64,000 nucleotides of DNA, taken from the IMG/VR virus record IMGVR_UViG_3300005613_000002, positions 1 to 64,000 of that record. One strand, 5' to 3'. A model generated the notes under the pieces. That model was not told where the DNA came from. It was given only the letters and a program-made list of their open reading frames with translations, and ran no database searches. Below are positions 40,037-46,018 of the stretch, one piece after another; positions within the stretch are counted from its first letter, which is position 1, and each line of letters begins with the position of its first letter. Position numbers and translations under genes: made by a program.

Positions 40037-41131
40037 TTACATACTAAATTTATCTTGTTTCCTAGCTTTACGTCTTAATTCATTTACTTCTCTAAAAGCA
40101 TTTGGATTAAACGTTTCTTTTTTTACAATCGATACCAAATGATTAAATTCGTTTTCAGTAATAACCTGACCAACATAACCATCATTCTTTAACACATAAC
40201 TTTTTGCTCTTGAAGTACTACTATTCCCCTCAGAATCTAATGTAGCATCAAATGTAAATTCAAGAAGTTCTTGAACTTTTTCATGTACACTTAAAGTAAT
40301 ATTTTCTTTAGTTTTCTTTAATGCTTTTTCCATTAAATCAAGAAAATGTTCACGATTACTTTTTTTCAAGTTATTATATGTATCAGTAAATTCTTGTTTC
40401 GATGTTTTATCTTTCACTTCAGATATAATTGCAAGCGAACCATAACAATCACGAATCATCATATCCCATACTTGTTCGGCATAACTAAACGATGGGAATT
40501 TATCAATAGCAACAATTTCTTCATCAATTAATACTATAATACCAATCAAATTTTTTGGTCTTTCAAAATGAGCAATAAATTGTTCAAGTTTTTCATCATA
40601 CTTTTCGAAATATTTATTCAAATAATTACCAGTACTAGAAACAGTGTCTTTACCCAATTTTTCAATAGCTGGATAAATTCTTGAATAATCACCATTTTCA
40701 CCAATATTATCGAACAACATTTCACGCATACTAACTGGTATCATACGAAATTCTTGAGAATTTCTAAAATGACCTGTTTCAGAACCTTGAACACATCCAG
40801 CATCATGATAAGTAACAGTTTTATTCTTATCAATATAACCACCTTTAATCATTGCATGATTTTGCGCTTTTTGTTTTGTGATAACTGCCATTTGTGTTGG
40901 AACTATCACTTCCTTATTTTCTTTATTAGTCAAATCCATTTGACCATAAGAACTATTACTTGATACCAACGCAGTCAATGGATTAGCAAAACGAGTATCC
41001 AATGAATATTCAGCGTCTGTTGTTAAACAAACAATCTGCATGTTCATAATTGATTGAACAATTATATTTCCATCCACATCCTTAACTGGACGACAACCTT
41101 TTAATAGTTCTGTAAAATCTCTTGTATTCAT
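40037..41131 (-). CDS. ARPP-1 (DUF6569)-like protein
   Basis: Q-N-H...G-C-V-Q-G resembles the ARPP-1 QNR...SCVEQG pattern (from recall); 12-nt gap to the TROVE-like gene. Confidence 0.5.
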   Translation of the reverse strand: MNTRDFTELLKGCRPVKDVDGNIIVQSIMNMQIVCLTTDAEYSLDTRFANPLTALVSSNSSYGQMDLTNKENKEVIVPTQMAVITKQKAQNHAMIKGGYIDKNKTVTYHDAGCVQGSETGHFRNSQEFRMIPVSMREMLFDNIGENGDYSRIYPAIEKLGKDTVSSTGNYLNKYFEKYDEKLEQFIAHFERPKNLIGIIVLIDEEIVAIDKFPSFSYAEQVWDMMIRDCYGSLAIISEVKDKTSKQEFTDTYNNLKKSNREHFLDLMEKALKKTKENITLSVHEKVQELLEFTFDATLDSEGNSSTSRAKSYVLKNDGYVGQVITENEFNHLVSIVKKETFNPNAFREVNELRRKARKQDKFSM

Positions 41132-41143
41132 ATCGCTAAATTT

Positions 41144-42772
41144 TTATGCGTTTACACTTATTTTATTATTTCTCTTAACTGATGATGTTGAAATACTCAA
41201 CACTTGATTTTCCAACCAACGTTTTGTATCAATTTCAAGTAGTCTTGCTTGAATTTGTGGTTGTATTGCTACTGGATTATTAACTGCCATTGTAACAACA
41301 TCTGAACCTAATTTCCTAACATCAGCACCCATTTCAGCACTAGTTATTGGTGAAATTTGATATATTGGGATATTGCTTCCAGATTCATTTCTCCAAATAG
41401 AAATTACCTCATTAGTTAAACCATCATATGAATTTTCATATCCATCAGTTAAGATAAAAATTGCATCATATGGTTTTGTTGCATCTTCTTTCTTCAACAA
41501 CCAAATAAATGTGCTTGCCAAATCAGTAGTCTCACCCTCAGTTTCACAAAAATTAATATTCTTTGTTGACTTAGTTAATACCCTTGCAGTAAAATCTGCA
41601 ATTGCTCTTGGTGTATTTTTTGATTCTACCTTGTTCCCATTCATTGAATTACTTCTATCTACAATAACACCAATATTTTTATAATAGAAATCTTTAATTT
41701 TTTTCTTTTCAGCAAGATTATCAATAGCTATTTTTAATTCTTCTGTCCAACCATTTTCATAACCTGTTTTATATAATGCAAGAAAATCAGTAGCTTTTTC
41801 AACATTTACATGTTTTTCAACACCCAATTTTGCTGTTGATTTAGTTTGACGAACTTGTTGATTAATTGATGTCACTTCAACATTTTTTCTGATTAAAGCC
41901 TTTGTTGCTTCTCTCTGAATTTTTGTTGACCACATTGAATGATATTGTGGGTGTTTCGTGCTTGAAACCAAACCTATCAATATTTCTTCAGGAACTGTTT
42001 TAATTCCATTAATATCGGTTTTTGCTTTTTGATAATCACTTAATAATGGAAAATCAGCCACATTATAATTTAAATTATTATCCATTTTAAATAAAAACAT
42101 CAATAATTTAAATGCACGAAGTGAATCGCCATTAAAATATTTCAAAATTAAATTATTTGCAATAGACATTTCTTTAGCATCACTAAACAAACCATTATTA
42201 ACTGCTTGTTTACTAGCAATTGAAATTAAAATGCTTGTCTTTTTTTGACCATAGACATGTTTTAATATTTCAGCAATTTTATTACGATATTTCAATGAAT
42301 AAAATTCAATATTTGATTGACCCCAAATATATCCAAGTATAATTTTCCTTGTTCTTTCGTTGTTAACTTTTAATTTTTTCAAATCCATAAACAAACGAAG
42401 CACATATGGAATACCATTTTCACCAAGATTATTCAATGCAGTTAGAACTGCTTTATCACAAACCCCATTATCATACCAATCAATTGGATTAACAATATTA
42501 CATGCACCACCTTTTAACGTGTTTTTAAACTCATTTAACAACACTTCAGATATATAACGACCAGTTGCACCCTTTTGAGTTGCAATAATCAATGGTAGCT
42601 CCTTTGAGAGATTATATTGACTATTAATCTGTGCACGTATAGCATTCAATTGTTCATCTCTACTGTGATAGTAAGTGGCACTACTCTTAGCACCAGAAGC
42701 AATTGTTAAGCCGTCTATCAAAGACTGTTTGATAGAACTAAGCATTCTCTGTGTTAATACCAAATTTTCCAT
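41144..42772 (-). CDS. TROVE/Ro60-like protein (helical N-terminal region plus C-terminal vWA domain)
   Basis: vWA MIDAS: VIVDRSNSM, TDLA, ILTDG; about 380-aa helical N-terminal region; size and architecture fit Ro60-like proteins. Confidence 0.65.
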   Translation of the reverse strand: MENLVLTQRMLSSIKQSLIDGLTIASGAKSSATYYHSRDEQLNAIRAQINSQYNLSKELPLIIATQKGATGRYISEVLLNEFKNTLKGGACNIVNPIDWYDNGVCDKAVLTALNNLGENGIPYVLRLFMDLKKLKVNNERTRKIILGYIWGQSNIEFYSLKYRNKIAEILKHVYGQKKTSILISIASKQAVNNGLFSDAKEMSIANNLILKYFNGDSLRAFKLLMFLFKMDNNLNYNVADFPLLSDYQKAKTDINGIKTVPEEILIGLVSSTKHPQYHSMWSTKIQREATKALIRKNVEVTSINQQVRQTKSTAKLGVEKHVNVEKATDFLALYKTGYENGWTEELKIAIDNLAEKKKIKDFYYKNIGVIVDRSNSMNGNKVESKNTPRAIADFTARVLTKSTKNINFCETEGETTDLASTFIWLLKKEDATKPYDAIFILTDGYENSYDGLTNEVISIWRNESGSNIPIYQISPITSAEMGADVRKLGSDVVTMAVNNPVAIQPQIQARLLEIDTKRWLENQVLSISTSSVKRNNKISVNA

Positions 42773-42859
42773 AGTTACATTTTAAACTTTAATTATTAAT
42801 AAAAATAACATTTACGAACAGTATTATACGTATTCGATTAAATAATGTTACAAAAATTC

Positions 42860-42920
42860 AAAAAAAAAAATGAGCAAAAATTTCAACGTAATTAAACATC
42901 AAATTTCCCGCCCATTGCTC
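42860..42920 (-). terminator. Long hairpin plus U11 tract between the ncRNA array and the TROVE-like gene
   Basis: Minus strand GAGCAA...AAAUUUGAUG/CGUUGAAAUUU...UUGCUC then AUUUUUUUUUUU. Confidence 0.55.
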
Positions 42921-42956
42921 TTTGTTTAAAAAAAACATTACTTCCTTACAAATAAA

Positions 42957-43047
42957 GGAAAGAAGTGTGATTGTATTTTTTGTACGTTTGTGTCGCCACT
43001 ATCTGGGCGACAAATTTCAATTTACTGTAAACACAATAAGTTCTTCC
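42957..43047 (-). ncRNA. Y-RNA-like element D (conserved stem plus GC hairpin, no tRNA fold)
   Basis: GGAAGAAC.UAUUGUGUUUACAGUAA...; AUUGUGUUU pairs with AAAUACAAU; inner UGUCGCC/GGCGACA hairpin. Confidence 0.6.
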
Positions 43048-43176
43048 ATAAAACAAATTTTTTGAAAAAAATCAATATTTTACTATTGATAAAAACCATT
43101 TTTAACCTACACATCATTTTACTGATGATTCAAATGTTAGGTGGGGTGATGTTTTTATAAACATCCAAAAAACTTT

Positions 43177-43329
43177 GGGAATATTTTTAAAGTATTTGTT
43201 GCTTTTTGTGTGCAAGTTTTAACGACTTGTGACTTTACCGTTTGTCTATATCCCCAATTTTATTTTTTATTGGTGGGGATAGAAGGATTCGAACCTTCAA
43301 TAATTACTGTAAACACTTATAGTTTTCCC
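43177..43329 (-). ncRNA. Y-RNA-like element C: circularly permuted tRNA (T arm-acceptor 3'-CCA-spacer-acceptor 5'-D arm-anticodon arm) inside the conserved stem
   Basis: GAAGG-UUCGAAU-CCUUC-UAUCCCC-ACCA (43298-43271) precedes GGGGAUA-UA-GAC...GUC-A-CAAGU-CGUUAAA-ACUUG (43255-43213). Confidence 0.8.
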
Positions 43330-43467
43330 TTAATATCTTTAACCTATTGAACTGTGTGTTTATGTGAGGCACTACTTGGAATGTAATTTATCAGTTTTAC
43401 TAGCCTTTTCATGTTCATTCAATTTAGGAATCCGTTTCCATTTTGTTTGGATTCTTAGGTCAAATTG

Positions 43468-43602
43468 TGGGGAGAATCGGATTCGAACCGATAATCTATT
43501 GATTTCAACTCAATTGCTTTAACCTATTACTGTAAACACTAATAGTTCTCTTTTAAAGAGTAATGAGATAGTATTATTTGTTTTTGTTTTTGCTATCTCC
43601 CC
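43468..43602 (-). ncRNA. tRNA-like element B with the conserved stem inserted in the D-arm (anticodon-loop triplet UGA)
   Basis: 7-bp GGGGAGA/UCUCCCC acceptor, AUUGA/UCAAU anticodon stem, AUCGG-UUCGAAU-CCGAU T arm; about 62-nt insertion after C11. Confidence 0.75.
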
Positions 43603-43835
43603 ATTTATTAAATCCTGTAATTTTAATTAATACTTTATGTTTCTCTCTTTTCAGTAGCGTACATATCTCGTTAATCCTAAATTACAGAATTATTTTTTTA
43701 AATCTAAGCACCATGCCATTTCATAGGTATTAAAACCGCCAAAATTGGGGGTCTGCTTAAATTTATTTCATTATTTTAAAGAACTTTAAGCCAGTTACGT
43801 TTACATAAAGTAAAGAGGCTTTACTGACTATCATG

Positions 43836-43923
43836 TAGCGGGAGAGGGATTCGAACCCCCGTTAAACCTTATTCAGGACTCCGTGCTTATGAGACAGGTG
43901 AGATACCGCTTCTCCATCCCGCA
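43836..43923 (-). tRNA. tRNA with CAU anticodon (Met or Ile2) and a 20-nt variable arm; no encoded CCA
   Basis: UGCGGGA/UCCCGCU acceptor, GAG/CUC D stem, CUCAUAA loop, GGGGG-UUCGAAU-CCCUC T arm. Confidence 0.75.
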
Positions 43924-43937
43924 ATATATTTTTTATA

Positions 43938-44064
43938 AAAGGATAGTTTATTTGTTATATGTTGTTTTTACAAAGTTGGATTTGAACCAACGGCATACTG
44001 CTTATAAGGCAATCACTCTAACCGACTGAGTTATTTGTTACTGTAATAACAATTAGTTTCCTTT
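43938..44064 (-). ncRNA. Element A: tRNA-Ile(UAU)-like cloverleaf (43967-44040) whose acceptor stem is extended by the conserved stem
   Basis: ACUC/GAGU D stem, AUUGC-CUUAUAA-GCAGU, GUUGG-UUCAAAU-CCAAC; outer AAAGGA/UCCUUU and UUGUUAU/AUAACAA pairs. Confidence 0.8.
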
Positions 44065-44108
44065 AATATTTTCATCATTTTATATGAACGTTTTGTCCTA
44101 AGACGATA

Positions 44109-44138
44109 CAAATGTAAACATTATTTTTTAATATACAA
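44109..44138 (-). promoter_or_regulatory. Bacteroidota-type promoter TTG-N19-TACATTTG upstream of the ncRNA array
   Basis: Exact consensus and spacing about 45 nt before element A; a GTATTTATA motif also lies at 44177-44185. Confidence 0.65.
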
Positions 44139-44224
44139 CACTTTTTATAAAAAAATTTAAATTATACGTCTGGGATTATAAATACATAAATAATTTCAAA
44201 AAGTTTATAAATTTTAATAAATTT

Positions 44225-46018
44225 TTATTCTTTTTTTGTAACCACTTGATTCTTACGTTCTTCGATTAGTCTATCTCTAATACTAATCTGTTTTGAATAT
44301 ATATCATCAGGGTCAATAAAATCATCTTCGGAAACCTCAACAATTGGTTCAGTATTGTTTTTTAGTTCTACTTTCTCATTTTCAATATTAATTGACTCAA
44401 CATCTGACTTAACAGTTTCATCCTTAATAAGATTAGCACCTTCTTTAATTGGTTCATTTTCTTTTTTTATCTTATTATATTGCTCCAACATATCATTTAG
44501 AGGCTCATTTACTGGTTCATTTACAGTATCATTATTTGCTTTACCAATAATTTCACCTTCAGTAATTTGACTTGCAGCAACATGTACTTTACTCATATTA
44601 CTTTCTAATTTATCAATATCTGTAGAATCATGATGTTTTTTACCTTGATTTAATTTATCGTATTTATATCTATCATCTTCAATTCTAATTTCCATTGTAT
44701 CATTATTGAATATACAATTTTCAAAAGTCTGTCCATCAGCAGCAAACCTAGCTTTAATAATTCTAATATTAGCTAATTGTGATACTTTTTGGTCTGGAGT
44801 TTTTGCAACACTCATAAAAAAGTGAGCTTTTTGTATTCTTTTAATACTACCACCACTTTGATGTGCTTCAACATATTCAGCATCAAAACCTGAACGATTA
44901 GATTGTATTGCAGTCCATGCTGGAATATCGAAATCAGAAGATAATGTCTCAAAACCTTTAATAATGGCAAGTTCAGCTTCATTCCTGTCTGCGGTTTTTT
45001 TATGTGATTCAAGACAATCAAGATAATCTAACACCAACATATCGAATTTATAACCAAATTTTTTCTCATGCGATAACATCCAATTACGTACATCAGTAAT
45101 TGTTGTATTTTCTTGACTAAATTTCTTGATTATTAATTTACCTCTGTTTGTTTCTTTAGCAACACCATGTATGATTTCTTTAATTTTAGCATTTTCAATA
45201 TCATCATCCATTTTACTTAATGCGACTTTTGACCATATTGTATAATGCTTACGTTTTACCTGATCTTTAGTATCTTCAAATATGATTTGTGCAACATTAT
45301 ATTCACCAAGATATGCTGTATTTGCAATTTTCGTTAAAATTGTTGTTTTACCAACACCACTAGGTGTAAGTATTACACCAATTTCACCTTTACCTAATCC
45401 ACCACCAGTTAATGAATCTATAACTTCAATACCTGTTGGTATTGTTTTCCTAAATTCTTTTCTCAATGTTCTATCAATATTATCGAAAATTTCCTCACAA
45501 TCATCACCAACTTCACCAATTAATGATACTTTTTGAAATTTTTCTTCAATTGTAGTTACTGTATGTTTATTTTTTATTTCACCAGATTTGGTTTTATCGA
45601 TAATAAATTCACCTAATTTTCTATATTCTTGTTGTTTAATGAAATTATTGGTAGCTTTTTGTACTACATCACCATCATTTAATGTTTTTCTATTAATAAC
45701 ATTTTCATTCCATAATTCAACCTGTTTTAAAACACCAAACAATACTTCACTTTCAATTTCATTATTTGGTGCTTTATATCTATTTATTGCTTGGCGTATA
45801 CTCTTATTTTGATAATTTGGGACTTTTTCAAATTCTCTATAAAATTCAATAATTATAATAAAAAATCTTTTAATGTTTGGGTCATCGAAATATTCAATTG
45901 CTAATGATGGTAATACTCTTTCAGCGAATTCTGGTTCAACCAATAATTGCCAAATAAGTTTCAATTGAAATTCATGCCCTAAATATGAAGTAATTGTATT
46001 TTCTGATGTTTTACTCAT
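44225..46018 (-). CDS. Replicative DnaB-like helicase (T4 gp41-like)
   Basis: TG...D.LTGGG...GEI.VI..PSGVGKTT, VLDYLD, WTAIQSNR, K.RF. Confidence 0.92.
   Translation of the reverse strand: MSKTSENTITSYLGHEFQLKLIWQLLVEPEFAERVLPSLAIEYFDDPNIKRFFIIIIEFYREFEKVPNYQNKSIRQAINRYKAPNNEIESEVLFGVLKQVELWNENVINRKTLNDGDVVQKATNNFIKQQEYRKLGEFIIDKTKSGEIKNKHTVTTIEEKFQKVSLIGEVGDDCEEIFDNIDRTLRKEFRKTIPTGIEVIDSLTGGGLGKGEIGVILTPSGVGKTTILTKIANTAYLGEYNVAQIIFEDTKDQVKRKHYTIWSKVALSKMDDDIENAKIKEIIHGVAKETNRGKLIIKKFSQENTTITDVRNWMLSHEKKFGYKFDMLVLDYLDCLESHKKTADRNEAELAIIKGFETLSSDFDIPAWTAIQSNRSGFDAEYVEAHQSGGSIKRIQKAHFFMSVAKTPDQKVSQLANIRIIKARFAADGQTFENCIFNNDTMEIRIEDDRYKYDKLNQGKKHHDSTDIDKLESNMSKVHVAASQITEGEIIGKANNDTVNEPVNEPLNDMLEQYNKIKKENEPIKEGANLIKDETVKSDVESINIENEKVELKNNTEPIVEVSEDDFIDPDDIYSKQISIRDRLIEERKNQVVTKKE

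What the first reader, a model, noticed from the sequence alone, without database searches (positions are those of the whole stretch)
43177..43329. Element C: circularly permuted tRNA with encoded CCA, intact anticodon arm and UUA triplet
The 3' half (T arm, UAUCCCC, ACCA; 43298-43271) is transcribed before the 43-nt 5' half (positions 1-43; 43255-43213), separated by a 15-nt A/U spacer, with a perfect 7-bp acceptor stem. The termini pair through GGGAA/UUCCC and AAGUGUUU/AAAUACUU. The order resembles YrlA, two-piece tmRNA and algal/archaeal permuted tRNAs, but YrlA-type mimics lack an anticodon arm. The loop CGUUAAA gives UUA (would read the UAA stop) with non-canonical G33. Since TAA appears to be the usual stop in this window, a mimic or decoy role is more plausible than suppression.
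Basis: partly seen in the sequence, partly recalled or inferred. Interest (0 to 1): 0.8.

Follow-up and report, generated by a model that had tools for sequence, protein, structure and literature searches.

The report
Phage Y-RNA-like permuted tRNA mimic
Element C is a real, conserved and transcribed small RNA of a jumbo phage that folds as a complete tRNA in circularly permuted order, and it lies just upstream of a previously unrecognised Ro60 (TROVE) gene, so it is best read as a new kind of tRNA-mimicking Y RNA, not a stop-codon suppressor.

Summary
On the minus strand, 43329-43177 encodes a T arm, acceptor 3' strand, ACCA, a 15-nt spacer, acceptor 5' strand, D arm and anticodon arm. Its ends are closed by a two-part helix. 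One copy (120 bits or more) occurs in 57 related jumbo-phage loci. In 44 distinct homologs, 98.3% of pair cells are paired and 25 of 35 pairs show compensatory changes. The Levitt pair 15:48 covaries perfectly and the universal tRNA core bases are invariant. ARAGORN calls all 44 un-permuted versions tRNAs.

The UUA triplet is not conserved: there are 24 different loops in 44 homologs. The terminal helix is a stem-loop-stem "handle" that four RNAs in this window share. The next gene, 42772-41144, has no Pfam hit but models as Ro60 (top 13 PDB matches, Z up to 16). An ARPP-1 gene follows it in 69 loci.

Peat metatranscriptome contigs cover a homolog's RNA array at 10-20 times flank depth and show no circular junction. 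A relative with 49% Ro60 identity carries the same RNA un-permuted, with the handle as its variable arm.

Best reading: a Ro60-partner Y RNA with a variable-arm-permuted tRNA module, a new variant of the YrlA kind. Ro60 binding, RNase P cutting and the biological role are inferred, not shown.

The parts
43325..43329 (-). Handle helix P1, 5' strand (GGGAA)
   Evidence: Pairs with 43181-43177. 100% paired in 44 homologs, with 2 fully compensatory changes (GAGAA/TTCTC and GGAAA/TTTCC).
43319..43324 (-). 5' side of the handle's internal loop (AACTAT), containing the conserved RAAC motif
   Evidence: Across 176 distinct handle copies of all types, A-A-C is 99%, 95% and 94% conserved. In homolog L003, an abundant RNA 5' end maps to the C of this motif.
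43311..43318 (-). Handle helix P2, 5' strand (AAGTGTTT)
   Evidence: Pairs with 43197-43190. 95.9% paired, and 6 of 10 pairs show compensatory changes.
43299..43310 (-). Conserved single-stranded junction ACAGTAAT, then TATT. The last T is tRNA position 48.
   Evidence: C, A, G and A of CAGTA are invariant in the alignment. Position 48 covaries perfectly with position 15: G:C in 38 and A:U in 6 homologs, with A:U in the window.
43282..43298 (-). T arm (GAAGG TTCGAAT CCTTC)
   Evidence: T54, T55, C56 and A58 are invariant. The stem is 100% paired, and 3 of 5 pairs show compensatory changes.
43271..43281 (-). Acceptor 3' strand TATCCCC, discriminator A and the encoded CCA
   Evidence: All 7 acceptor pairs show compensatory changes. 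The base at positions 74/75/76 is C/C/A in 35/32/35 of the 37 homologs with a long loop.
43256..43270 (-). A/U-rich spacer that closes the acceptor stem as a loop
   Evidence: Length is 3-22 nt and the sequence is not conserved among homologs.
43249..43255 (-). Acceptor 5' strand GGGGATA. The predicted RNase P site is 5' of G43255.
   Evidence: Perfect 7-bp complement of 43281-43275. The RNase P cut is inferred by analogy with M. smegmatis YrlA (PMC4201824).
43230..43248 (-). U8-A9, D arm (GAC AAACGGTAAA GTC) and A26
   Evidence: U8, A14 and G18 are invariant and G19 is present in 43 of 44. The D stem is 100% paired, with compensatory changes in 2 of 3 pairs.
43213..43229 (-). Anticodon arm CAAGT CGTTAAA ACTTG
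   Evidence: All 5 stem pairs show compensatory changes. The loop is 7 nt in 43 of 44 homologs, with 24 different sequences among the 44. Positions 37-38 are AA in 41 of 44. Positions 32-35 change about 2-2.6 times faster than the rest of the RNA.
43198..43212 (-). A/C-rich single-stranded linker between the anticodon arm and the handle
   Evidence: An A-rich linker of 10-17 nt is present in all homologs and in the other handle RNAs.
43177..43197 (-). Handle 3' strand: P2 (AAATACTT), internal loop (TAAAAATA) and P1 (TTCCC)
   Evidence: Covariation with the 5' strand. The same stem-loop-stem design is found by duplex folding around the other handle copies.
41144..42772 (-). Ro60/Rsr-like protein (helical-repeat ring plus vWA domain with a DxSxS MIDAS motif), the inferred protein partner
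   Evidence: No Pfam or PHROG hit. ESM Atlas neighbours are TROVE clusters. AF2 model has pLDDT 80.5. The top 13 Foldseek PDB hits are all Ro60. VIA-align gives Z 12.5-16 over about 400 residues.
40037..41131 (-). ARPP-1 domain protein, co-operonic with the Ro60-like gene
   Evidence: Pfam PF20208, E 2.9e-15. Atlas score 0.98. It follows the Ro60-like gene in 69 loci. It is fused to it in P0262 and adjacent to it in the distant locus L086, which also carries an RNA ligase gene.

Best explanation
Element C is a non-coding RNA of the Y RNA kind. It belongs to a phage-encoded Ro60 (TROVE) system.

Its 5' and 3' ends pair in a stem, internal loop, stem "handle". The 5' strand of the handle has the consensus GRARAAC(U/G)-N4-GUKUUUWCAGUAA. 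Four RNAs in this window and 3-6 in relatives share this handle. I infer that it is the Ro60-binding module.

The rest of the RNA folds into a complete L-shaped tRNA written in circularly permuted order. The chain break lies in the variable-arm position, where the handle emerges. The acceptor stem is closed by a loop that carries the discriminator and CCA.

Shown here:
- the fold and its conservation, including tertiary pairs;
- one copy per genome;
- transcription of a homolog on the predicted strand, well above flank level;
- the Ro60 fold of the neighbouring gene;
- the conserved order RNA array, then Ro60-like gene, then ARPP-1 gene.

Inferred:
- Ro60 binds the handle.
- The tRNA module acts as a tRNA mimic that brings a tRNA-recognising factor to Ro60/ARPP-1, or competes for one. 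The setting would be RNA quality control or repair, or counter-defence against tRNA-targeting nucleases.
- Host RNase P can cut 5' of G43255 and trimming can expose the encoded CCA, as happens with M. smegmatis YrlA. That would give a two-piece tRNA-like particle clamped by the handle.
- The fast-changing anticodon-loop positions 32-35 form the contact surface under diversifying pressure. They are not a decoding triplet.
For: Structure:
- 44 distinct homologs, 98.3% of cells paired, 25 of 35 pairs compensatory, 0 of 500 shuffles as good.
- RNAalifold gives the same structure on its own.
- The Levitt pair 15:48 covaries 44 of 44, and U8, A14, G18, T54, T55, C56 and A58 are invariant.
- ARAGORN of 44 un-permuted constructs tRNAs.

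Distribution:
- The covariance model finds exactly one copy of 120 bits or more in 57 related loci. The other handle RNAs score 17-46 bits.

Handle:
- It recurs around tRNA-Ile, around a GC hairpin, and as a closed hairpin inside a tRNA D loop.
- It has a conserved RAAC motif in the bulge.

Protein partner:
- ORF 42772-41144 has the Ro60 fold.
- ARPP-1 follows it in 69 loci, is fused to it in P0262, and sits beside it with an RNA ligase gene in L086.

Precedents:
- Bacterial and phage YrlA genes lie within 4 kb of rsr on the same strand, mimic tRNA in the order T, acceptor, D, and M. smegmatis YrlA is cut by RNase P and receives CCA (PMC4201824).
- Thermus phage phiLo has two Y-like RNAs upstream of its Ro60 gene (PMC12135203).

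Expression:
- Peat metatranscriptome contigs cover the homologous array at depth 43-99, against 0-13 in the flanks. Adapter orientation fits the predicted strand.

More distant relatives:
- L069 (49% Ro60 identity) has the same RNA un-permuted, with the handle as a closed variable arm. Rfam scores it as a tRNA at 47.8 bits.
- L085 has handle-flanked tRNAs directly upstream of its Ro60-like gene.
Against: - No binding evidence exists. The complex prediction was not run by the tool.
- The handle lacks the GNCGAAN0-1G/CGAA motif that defines YrlA. The window has AACUAU there.
- No Rfam family other than tRNA and the permuted tmRNA model gave any match.
- The handle also flanks an ordinary tRNA-Ile, so it could be a processing or stability cassette instead of, or as well as, a Ro60 site.
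- Synteny among phages with 60-85% protein identity is weak evidence of functional linkage. Only L069, L085 and L086 add more distant support.
- In L003 an abundant 5' end lies at C8. That would remove the P1 5' strand from that RNA species.
- Contigs run unbroken through the acceptor loop, so RNase P cutting is not shown. Contigs cannot exclude it either.
- Seven homologs close the acceptor with an 8-bp stem and a 3-nt loop without CCA.
Confidence: 0.66

Rival explanations
1. A working two-piece tRNA. RNase P and 3' trimming free the encoded CCA, and the two pieces stay together through the acceptor stem, the tertiary core and the handle. The molecule is aminoacylated and used in translation, for example to replace host tRNAs (Lys, Asn, Thr, His, Tyr) destroyed by anticodon nucleases.
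For: - A full cloverleaf with all tertiary-core bases.
- NCCA is kept at positions 73-76 in most homologs.
- A 7-bp acceptor stem is the main RNase P determinant, and M. smegmatis YrlA is cut and receives CCA (PMC4201824).
- The un-permuted L069 homolog has free acceptor ends.
- The loop triplets are mostly those of ANN and GUN decoders, with A37 and A38 conserved.
- Phage tRNAs are reported to substitute for cleaved host tRNAs (PMC7824862).
Against: - The acceptor stem, including pair 1:72, and the discriminator vary freely and do not track the triplet. No coherent aminoacylation identity is visible.
- U33 is replaced in 15 of 44 homologs.
- The commonest triplet, CUU, reads AAG, a rare codon in this phage (12.6 per thousand).
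- The window's UUA would read the main stop codon.
- Seven homologs lack CCA and close the stem tightly.
- RNA-seq contigs show the uncut form at high depth.
Confidence: 0.15
2. The handle is only an RNase III-type or similar processing and stability cassette of a phage tRNA operon. The Ro60 gene is an incidental neighbour, and Element C is a rearranged tRNA kept for some unrelated structural reason.
For: - The handle flanks a genuine tRNA-Ile as a leader-trailer duplex.
- In L003 an abundant 5' end maps inside the handle's internal loop.
- Fragments of rearranged tRNA-handle units lie between the elements (43467-43330).
- Partial tRNA duplicates in L086 show how permuted orders can arise.
Against: - One intact copy per genome in 57 loci, with selection on every helix and on tertiary pairs.
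- Single-stranded handle motifs (RAAC, CAGUAA) are conserved, which a mere duplex substrate would not need.
- Handle RNAs still lie next to Ro60-like genes at 49% identity and below.
- The layout matches Y RNA loci in bacteria and in phage phiLo.
Confidence: 0.1
3. A permuted tRNA gene of the algal or archaeal kind. Leader and trailer are cut and ligated to a circular intermediate, and RNase P and Z then open the acceptor to give an ordinary contiguous tRNA.
For: The gene order is the same (3' half, CCA, spacer, 5' half), and leader and trailer pair.
Against: - The leader-trailer helix is a 5-bp / internal loop / 9-10-bp handle separated from the tRNA body by 10-17 nt of single strand. It is not a bulge-helix-bulge motif.
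- The same handle carries non-tRNA payloads.
- No back-joined or skipped form appears in four metatranscriptomes. Contigs can miss rare forms.
- The triplet is not conserved.
- No splicing endonuclease or ligase gene was seen among the 22 window ORFs scanned against Pfam or PHROGs.
Confidence: 0.03
4. The tRNA-like domain of a two-piece (permuted) tmRNA.
For: Rfam's tmRNA_permuted model aligns to T arm, acceptor, CCA, loop, acceptor at 23.8 bits, E 0.02.
Against: - The score is below the 47-bit cut-off and covers only model positions 36-95 of 213.
- ARAGORN finds no tmRNA.
- A full D arm and anticodon arm take the place of the tag reading frame and pseudoknots.
- Pair 3:70 is G-C, not G-U.
Confidence: 0.01

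Closest known systems
YrlA-type bacterial and phage Y RNAs (Chen et al. 2014, PMC4201824)
   Same: Both are non-coding RNAs encoded just upstream of a Ro60/Rsr gene on the same strand. In both, the 5' and 3' ends pair in a stem-bulge-stem module. Both carry a tRNA-like module in the order T arm, acceptor-like stem-loop, D arm, with the tRNA tertiary bases and a covarying 15:48 pair. The 7-bp acceptor is comparable to M. smegmatis YrlA, which RNase P cuts and which receives CCA. Both loci hold several Y-like RNAs.
   Different: Here the chain break and the handle sit at the variable-arm position, not at the anticodon stem. A complete anticodon arm with a 7-nt loop is kept. CCA is encoded in most members. 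The GNCGAAN0-1G/CGAA motif is replaced by GRARAAC(U/G). No Rfam family other than tRNA and tmRNA_permuted matched. The Ro60 protein is too divergent for the Pfam TROVE model. The partner gene is ARPP-1, not the RtcB and RtcA genes of the rsr-containing RNA repair operon.
Thermus phage phiLo Ro60 with Yrl1/Yrl2 (PMC12135203)
   Same: A phage-encoded Ro60 with Y-like RNAs directly upstream, built as stem, bulge, stem. The phiLo Ro60 structures (9KOP, 9L5Y) are among the best structural matches to the window's protein (Z 15.6-16.0).
   Different: The passages of the phiLo paper that I read define Yrl1 and Yrl2 by a CGAA bulge and do not describe a tRNA cloverleaf. The present family has 3-6 handle RNAs, including true tRNAs.
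Circularly permuted tRNA genes of red and green algae and some archaea
   Same: The 3' half precedes the 5' half, and leader and trailer pair.
   Different: In those genes (from general knowledge) a bulge-helix-bulge motif is cut by a splicing endonuclease. The product passes through a circular intermediate and matures to an ordinary tRNA with a fixed anticodon. None of these features is seen here.
Two-piece (permuted) tmRNA
   Same: The topology T arm, acceptor 3' strand, CCA, loop, acceptor 5' strand, with a long helix leaving the tRNA-like domain. Maturation would leave two base-paired pieces.
   Different: There is no tag reading frame, no pseudoknots and no G3:U70 pair. A full D arm and anticodon arm are present.
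D. radiodurans Yrn1 (normal-order tRNA-like Y RNA)
   Same: It shows that Y RNAs have arisen from tRNAs in different topologies (PMC4201824). The window's handle-flanked tRNA-Ile and the un-permuted L069 homolog are normal-order cases in the same array.
   Different: Yrn1 has a 6-nt anticodon-like loop and an incomplete D arm. It is not permuted.

Membership tests
Y RNA / YrlA | Encoded within about 4 kb of a Ro60/Rsr (TROVE) gene on the same strand | tested here: met
   The element ends 405 nt upstream of ORF 42772-41144, on the same strand. That ORF has the Ro60 fold. The same arrangement holds in 57 loci and in the distant loci L069 and L085.
Y RNA / YrlA | 5' and 3' ends pair into a stem-bulge-stem module | tested here: met
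   P1 is 5 bp and P2 is 8-10 bp, separated by an internal loop. Compensatory changes occur in 8 of the 15 handle pairs.
Y RNA / YrlA | Conserved 5'-strand motif GNCGAAN0-1G (CGAA) at the Ro-binding site | tested here: not met
   The window has GGGAAAACUAUAAG. The consensus across all handles is GRARAAC(U/G). CGAA occurs only in the subset of homologs whose leader reads AACGAAAAG.
Y RNA / YrlA | tRNA-like module in the order T arm, acceptor-like stem-loop, D arm, with tRNA tertiary bases | tested here: met
Y RNA / YrlA | Terminal stem takes the place of the anticodon stem, with no separate anticodon arm | tested here: not met
   A complete 5-bp anticodon stem with a 7-nt loop is present. The termini leave from the variable region, between positions 45 and 46-48.
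Y RNA / YrlA | Physically bound by Ro60 | not testable with these tools
Y RNA / YrlA | Match to a curated Rfam model | tested here: not met
   At E up to 10, the only meaningful matches on the element's own strand are to tRNA and tmRNA_permuted. The others over 42700-44300 are chance-level matches to unrelated families.
Ro60/TROVE protein (neighbouring gene) | Helical-repeat ring followed by a vWA domain with a MIDAS motif | tested here: met
   DxSxS at residues 372-376. The model is helical over 1-356 and alpha/beta over 360-530. Full-length matches to 10 Ro60 entries give Z 12.5-16. Pfam's TROVE model does not detect it.
Algal/archaeal permuted tRNA genes | 3' half encoded upstream of the 5' half | tested here: met
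Algal/archaeal permuted tRNA genes | Bulge-helix-bulge motif at the leader-trailer junction, and a circular intermediate | tested here: not met
   The handle geometry is not bulge-helix-bulge. No back-joined form was seen in four RNA runs, although contigs can miss one.
Two-piece tmRNA | Tag reading frame, pseudoknots and a G3:U70 pair | tested here: not met
   Partial Rfam match of 23.8 bits against a cut-off of 47. ARAGORN finds none. Pair 3:70 is G-C.
Canonical tRNA | Contiguous cloverleaf recognised by tRNA finders, with an anticodon conserved among orthologs | tested here: not met
   Not called in native order. Called in 44 of 44 cases only after un-permuting, with 12 different identifiable triplets plus one uncallable 6-nt loop.

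The most novel reading that the evidence does not exclude
The phage makes a two-piece, CCA-ended tRNA look-alike that rides on a Ro60/ARPP-1 particle. Its rapidly diversifying anticodon loop would serve as bait or competitive substrate for host anticodon nucleases, or for other tRNA-sensing defences. That would couple decoying to an RNA repair or quality-control machine. The same Ro60 handle is grafted onto different positions of tRNAs: the acceptor end, the D loop and the variable arm. This would make a modular tRNA-on-a-handle system and would at last give the tRNA-like module of Y RNAs a function.
Probability: 0.2. Interest if true: 0.88.

Novelty: new variant of a known kind. Interest (0 to 1): 0.74.

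Why it matters
Why bacterial Y RNAs carry a tRNA-like module has been an open question since 2014. This family offers natural variation that bears on it.
- It has a complete cloverleaf with an anticodon arm.
- The same RNA exists in permuted and un-permuted forms in related phages.
- Only anticodon-loop positions 32-35 evolve fast.
- The handle is also attached to real tRNAs.

The family also uncovers a large clade of Ro60 proteins that Pfam and PHROGs do not detect. These proteins are always paired with ARPP-1 and occur in jumbo phages of 300-370 kb that are probably Bacteroidota phages. It shows that gene finders which expect co-linear tRNAs miss a widespread class of phage tRNA-like RNAs.

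As far as the searchable literature shows, no circularly permuted complete tRNA has been described in a bacteriophage.

Tried and rejected
- **Repeated motif as a promoter only.** I first read GTGTTTACAGTAA (three exact copies) as a promoter. I rejected this as the sole reading, because its variable bases covary with a downstream strand in every copy. A promoter overlapping GGGAAAAC is not excluded for L003, where a 5' end falls at C8.
- **Leftovers of a tandem tRNA duplication.** Rejected because of conservation and covariation in 57 loci.
- **Ochre suppressor.** Rejected: the triplet is not conserved and TAA is the main stop codon.
- **T-box inducer.** Dropped because the hits in genome bins point to Bacteroidota hosts. 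That T-boxes are mainly a Firmicutes feature is general knowledge, not something tested here.
- **Loop-loop kissing with the neighbouring D-loop-handle tRNA.** The loops are not consistently complementary.
- **Serine or leucine identity through a long variable arm.** The D arm looks class II-like, but the acceptor and discriminator vary too freely.
- **Searches that found nothing.** Sequence searches for the Ro60 gene failed: Pfam, PHROGs, and both phmmer and a profile against PDB sequences. Only the language-model neighbours and the fold comparison revealed it. No RNA run was listed for the window itself. blastn against phage GenBank records found nothing. Complex prediction did not fold the protein-RNA pair. 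Two papers were not held in the library.
Full report
**1. Setting**

The window is part of IMG/VR contig UViG_3300005613_000002, a 321-kb contig (locus L062 at 100% identity). It is 25-30% G+C and all long ORFs lie on the minus strand. A replicative helicase, an exonuclease and a UvsX-like recombinase lie upstream, and tail-fibre genes lie downstream. It is therefore a jumbo phage. Related contigs are 300-370 kb long. A pattern search of one-per-species genomes found the element in five metagenome bins. Three are labelled Bacteroidota (Flavobacteriaceae, Bacteroidia, Bacteroidetes), one Candidatus Hatepunaea and one Methanobacteriaceae. This is a weak hint that the hosts are Bacteroidota.

The finding lies in a 1.45-kb gene-free stretch, 42773-44224.

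**2. The observation**

- T arm at 43298-43282.
- Acceptor 3' strand TATCCCC, discriminator A and CCA at 43281-43271.
- A 15-nt A/U spacer at 43270-43256.
- Acceptor 5' strand GGGGATA at 43255-43249.
- U8-A9 and the D arm, then an anticodon arm with loop CGTTAAA at 43229-43213.
- Terminal pairings GGGAA/TTCCC and AAGTGTTT/AAATACTT.

ARAGORN and Rfam at gathering thresholds report only tRNA-Ile(UAU) at 44040-43967 and an odd tRNA-Met(CAU) at 43923-43835. With relaxed thresholds, Rfam's permuted tmRNA model aligns to T arm, acceptor, CCA, loop, acceptor at 23.8 bits, below its 47-bit cut-off. The minimum-energy fold of the 153 nt is the proposed structure (z -2.79).

**3. Conservation**

I used the downstream ORF (42772-41144) as an anchor and fetched 76 related loci from viral contigs.
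- A simple scan found T arm, 7 nt, N, CCA, a 3-22 nt spacer and a perfect 7-nt complement in nearly all of them. The acceptor sequences differ widely.
- 44 distinct homologs align over 160 columns.
- For six helices (35 pairs), 98.3% of cells are paired and 25 pairs have compensatory changes. No shuffle out of 500 reaches the observed values, and slid controls reach at most 55%.
- RNAalifold predicts the same 35 pairs without guidance.
- U8, A14, G18, T54, T55, C56 and A58 are invariant. The Levitt pair 15:48 is G:C in 38 homologs and A:U in 6, with no exception. This places the base just before the T stem at tRNA position 48.
- After joining the halves in normal order, ARAGORN calls all 44 as tRNAs.
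- A covariance model finds exactly one copy of 120-156 bits in each of 57 loci, including a Bacteroidetes bin contig.

**4. What is not conserved**

- The anticodon-like loop is 7 nt long in 43 of 44 homologs and ends in AA in 41 of 44. It has 24 different sequences.
- Position 33 is U in only 29 of 44.
- The triplets correspond to Lys, Asn, Thr, His, Ser, Tyr, Gln and, in three cases, UUA.
- Relatives that share the window's acceptor sequence all have different loops.
- Positions 32-35 differ at 0.48-0.63 per site between homologs, against 0.18-0.28 for the rest of the RNA.
- The acceptor stem and the discriminator (A in 16, G in 18, T in 3) vary and do not track the triplet.
- Seven homologs lack CCA and close the acceptor as an 8-bp stem with a 3-nt loop.
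- TAA ends 46 of 55 ORFs.

The UUA triplet therefore has no family-wide meaning, and a coherent decoding role is unlikely.

**5. The terminal helix is a shared handle**

The 5' strand motif GRARAAC(U/G)-N4-GUKUUUWCAGUAA recurs 3-6 times per locus. Except in the D-loop type described below, where the partner strand lies just upstream, each copy has a complementary strand downstream. Together they form P1 (5-8 bp), an internal loop and P2 (7-10 bp). The payload between the strands differs. The window has four such units:
- tRNA-Ile flanked by the handle (44063-43939).
- A tRNA whose D loop carries the handle as a closed hairpin (43602-43468; the anticodon loop is mostly GUUGAAA in relatives).
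- Element C.
- A handle around a GC-rich hairpin (43047-42958; z -3.04).

The variable bases of the motif covary with their partners, so the motif is transcribed and paired, not merely a promoter.

**6. The neighbouring gene is Ro60**

ORF 42772-41144 (542 aa) has no Pfam or PHROG match and no match to PDB sequences.
- Its language-model neighbours are TROVE/vWA_Ro60 clusters.
- Its alignment shows a DxSxS MIDAS motif.
- An AlphaFold model (pLDDT 80.5, pTM 0.77) has Ro60 entries as its 13 best Foldseek matches: human, Xenopus, Deinococcus Rsr and Thermus phage phiLo. E-values run from 6e-6 to 1e-3, and the next hit is at 0.03.
- VIA-align gives Z 12.5-16.0 over about 400 residues that span both domains.

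The next gene (41131-40037) is an ARPP-1 domain protein. It follows the Ro60-like gene in 69 loci. It is fused to a Ro60-like protein in P0262. In the distant locus L086 it is adjacent to the Ro60-like gene, and an RNA ligase gene lies nearby.

A terminator-like hairpin followed by a T run (about 42920-42858) and a sigma-70-like promoter site (42851-42823) separate the RNA array from the Ro60 gene.

**7. Expression**

No RNA run was listed for the window. Peat metatranscriptomes do hold the homologous region of L003. Their contigs cover L003 2203-3029, which spans the RNA array up to its terminator, at word depth 43-99. The flanks are at 0-13. Illumina adapters abut the sequence at 2203 and 2561 (5' side) and at 2516, 3012 and 3029 (3' side). 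Their orientation fits transcripts of the predicted strand if the libraries are of the usual dUTP type.
- Position 2516 is the discriminator plus CA of the D-loop-handle tRNA.
- Position 2561 is the C of GGGAAAAC in the Element C homolog.
- Contigs run unbroken through the acceptor loop, and no back-joined or skipped form of the element appears.

Contigs drop minor forms, so processing at the acceptor loop is neither shown nor excluded.

**8. More distant relatives**

L069 (49% Ro60 identity) has the same RNA in normal order about 1.1 kb upstream of its Ro60-like gene. The order there is acceptor 5' strand, D arm, anticodon arm, then the handle as a closed hairpin in the variable-arm position, then T arm and acceptor 3' strand. 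Rfam scores it as a full tRNA with a long insertion, at 47.8 bits. Element C is thus a natural circular permutation of a tRNA that carries the handle as its variable arm.

L085, more distant still, has handle-flanked tRNAs directly upstream of its Ro60-like gene. L086 has a tRNA array just after its Ro60-like/ARPP pair. That array includes a partial tRNA duplicate, which shows how a permuted order could arise.

**9. Interpretation**

The layout matches what is known for Y RNAs. Bacterial and mycobacteriophage YrlA RNAs lie within 4 kb of rsr on the same strand. They have paired termini that carry the Ro-binding site, and a tRNA-like module in the order T, acceptor-like stem-loop, D. M. smegmatis YrlA, which has a 7-bp acceptor stem, is cut by RNase P and receives CCA in vivo (PMC4201824). 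Thermus phage phiLo has two Y-like RNAs upstream of its Ro60, and they assemble with host PNPase (PMC12135203). A jumbo-phage survey noted that a few jumbo phages carry a ROT/TROVE protein. It added that in cellular organisms this protein works with a tRNA-like partner (PMC7824862).

I therefore read Element C as the tRNA-mimicking Y RNA of a divergent phage Ro60/ARPP-1 system, with the handle as the probable Ro60 site.

It is not a YrlA in the strict sense:
- The break is in the variable arm.
- An anticodon arm is kept.
- CCA is encoded.
- The CGAA-type motif is replaced.
- No curated model matches.

Ro60 binding, RNase P cutting and the biological role are all inferences. The role could be RNA quality control or repair, or decoying of tRNA-targeting defences.

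**10. Rivals**

I considered four rival readings and give their weights in the rival section:
- a chargeable two-piece tRNA;
- a pure processing cassette with an incidental Ro60 neighbour;
- algal-type maturation through a circular intermediate;
- a two-piece tmRNA.

No paper describing a permuted complete tRNA in a bacteriophage turned up in the searchable library.

Noticed in passing
window 43602-43468 (minus strand): A tRNA in normal order (acceptor GGGGAGA/TCTCCCC, discriminator A) whose D loop holds a roughly 65-nt insertion. The insertion is the same handle, closed as a hairpin. In relatives its anticodon loop is mostly GUUGAAA (UGA), so it is conserved, unlike Element C. Rfam sees only positions 9-63 of the tRNA model, at 28.8 bits. 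In L003, an abundant RNA 3' end falls at its discriminator plus CA.
   Followed up: partly
window 44063-43939 (minus strand): The ordinary tRNA-Ile(UAU) (61.8 bits) is itself embedded in a handle. Leader AAGGAAACUAAUUGUUAUUACAGUA pairs with a trailer ending in UCCUU. This makes a real tRNA look like a normal-order Y RNA precursor.
   Followed up: partly
window 43047-42958 (minus strand): A fourth handle RNA whose payload is only a GC-rich hairpin (GUCGCC...GGCGAC). Its fold has z -3.04. It resembles a short YrlB-like Y RNA. Relatives also have a further type with a payload of about 30 nt, which the window lacks.
   Followed up: partly
window 43923-43835 (minus strand): A tRNA-Met(CAU) with an unusual 19-nt variable region and a mismatch in the anticodon stem (44.3 bits). 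The L003 homolog has a normal short variable loop.
   Followed up: no
window 43467-43330 (minus strand): Between the D-loop-handle tRNA and Element C lies a decayed fragment of a handle-plus-D-loop unit (CAGTTCAATAGGTTAAAG). In many relatives the two RNAs abut with only 3-6 nt between them. This suggests recombination between handle copies.
   Followed up: no
window 42772-40037 (minus strand); P0262; L086: A large clade of Ro60-like proteins (403 representative clusters at E up to 0.001) is invisible to Pfam's TROVE model. The members whose neighbourhood I examined (69 related loci, the P0262 fusion and L086) are paired or fused with ARPP-1/ARPP-2, and L086 also carries an RNA ligase gene.
   Followed up: partly
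L003 2203-2211 and 2301-2309: The abundant RNA 5' end at 2203 begins with CGGCATACA. This is complementary to TGTATGCCG inside the payload hairpin of the next handle RNA, so two alternative pairings are possible.
   Followed up: no
L082, L083 (genome contigs): Contigs matching the search pattern (the handle's CAGUAA motif followed by a T-arm motif) sit in metagenome bins labelled Methanobacteriaceae and Candidatus Hatepunaea. The full element was not confirmed there: the covariance model gave no match in either locus. If these are phage contigs at all, they are probably mis-binned and not evidence of such hosts.
   Followed up: no
window 42920-42823 (minus strand): A long hairpin followed by a run of 11 T ends the RNA array. 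A sigma-70-like site (GTAACA, 17 nt, TATAAT) precedes the Ro60-like gene. The RNAs and the protein genes therefore look like separate transcription units.
   Followed up: partly
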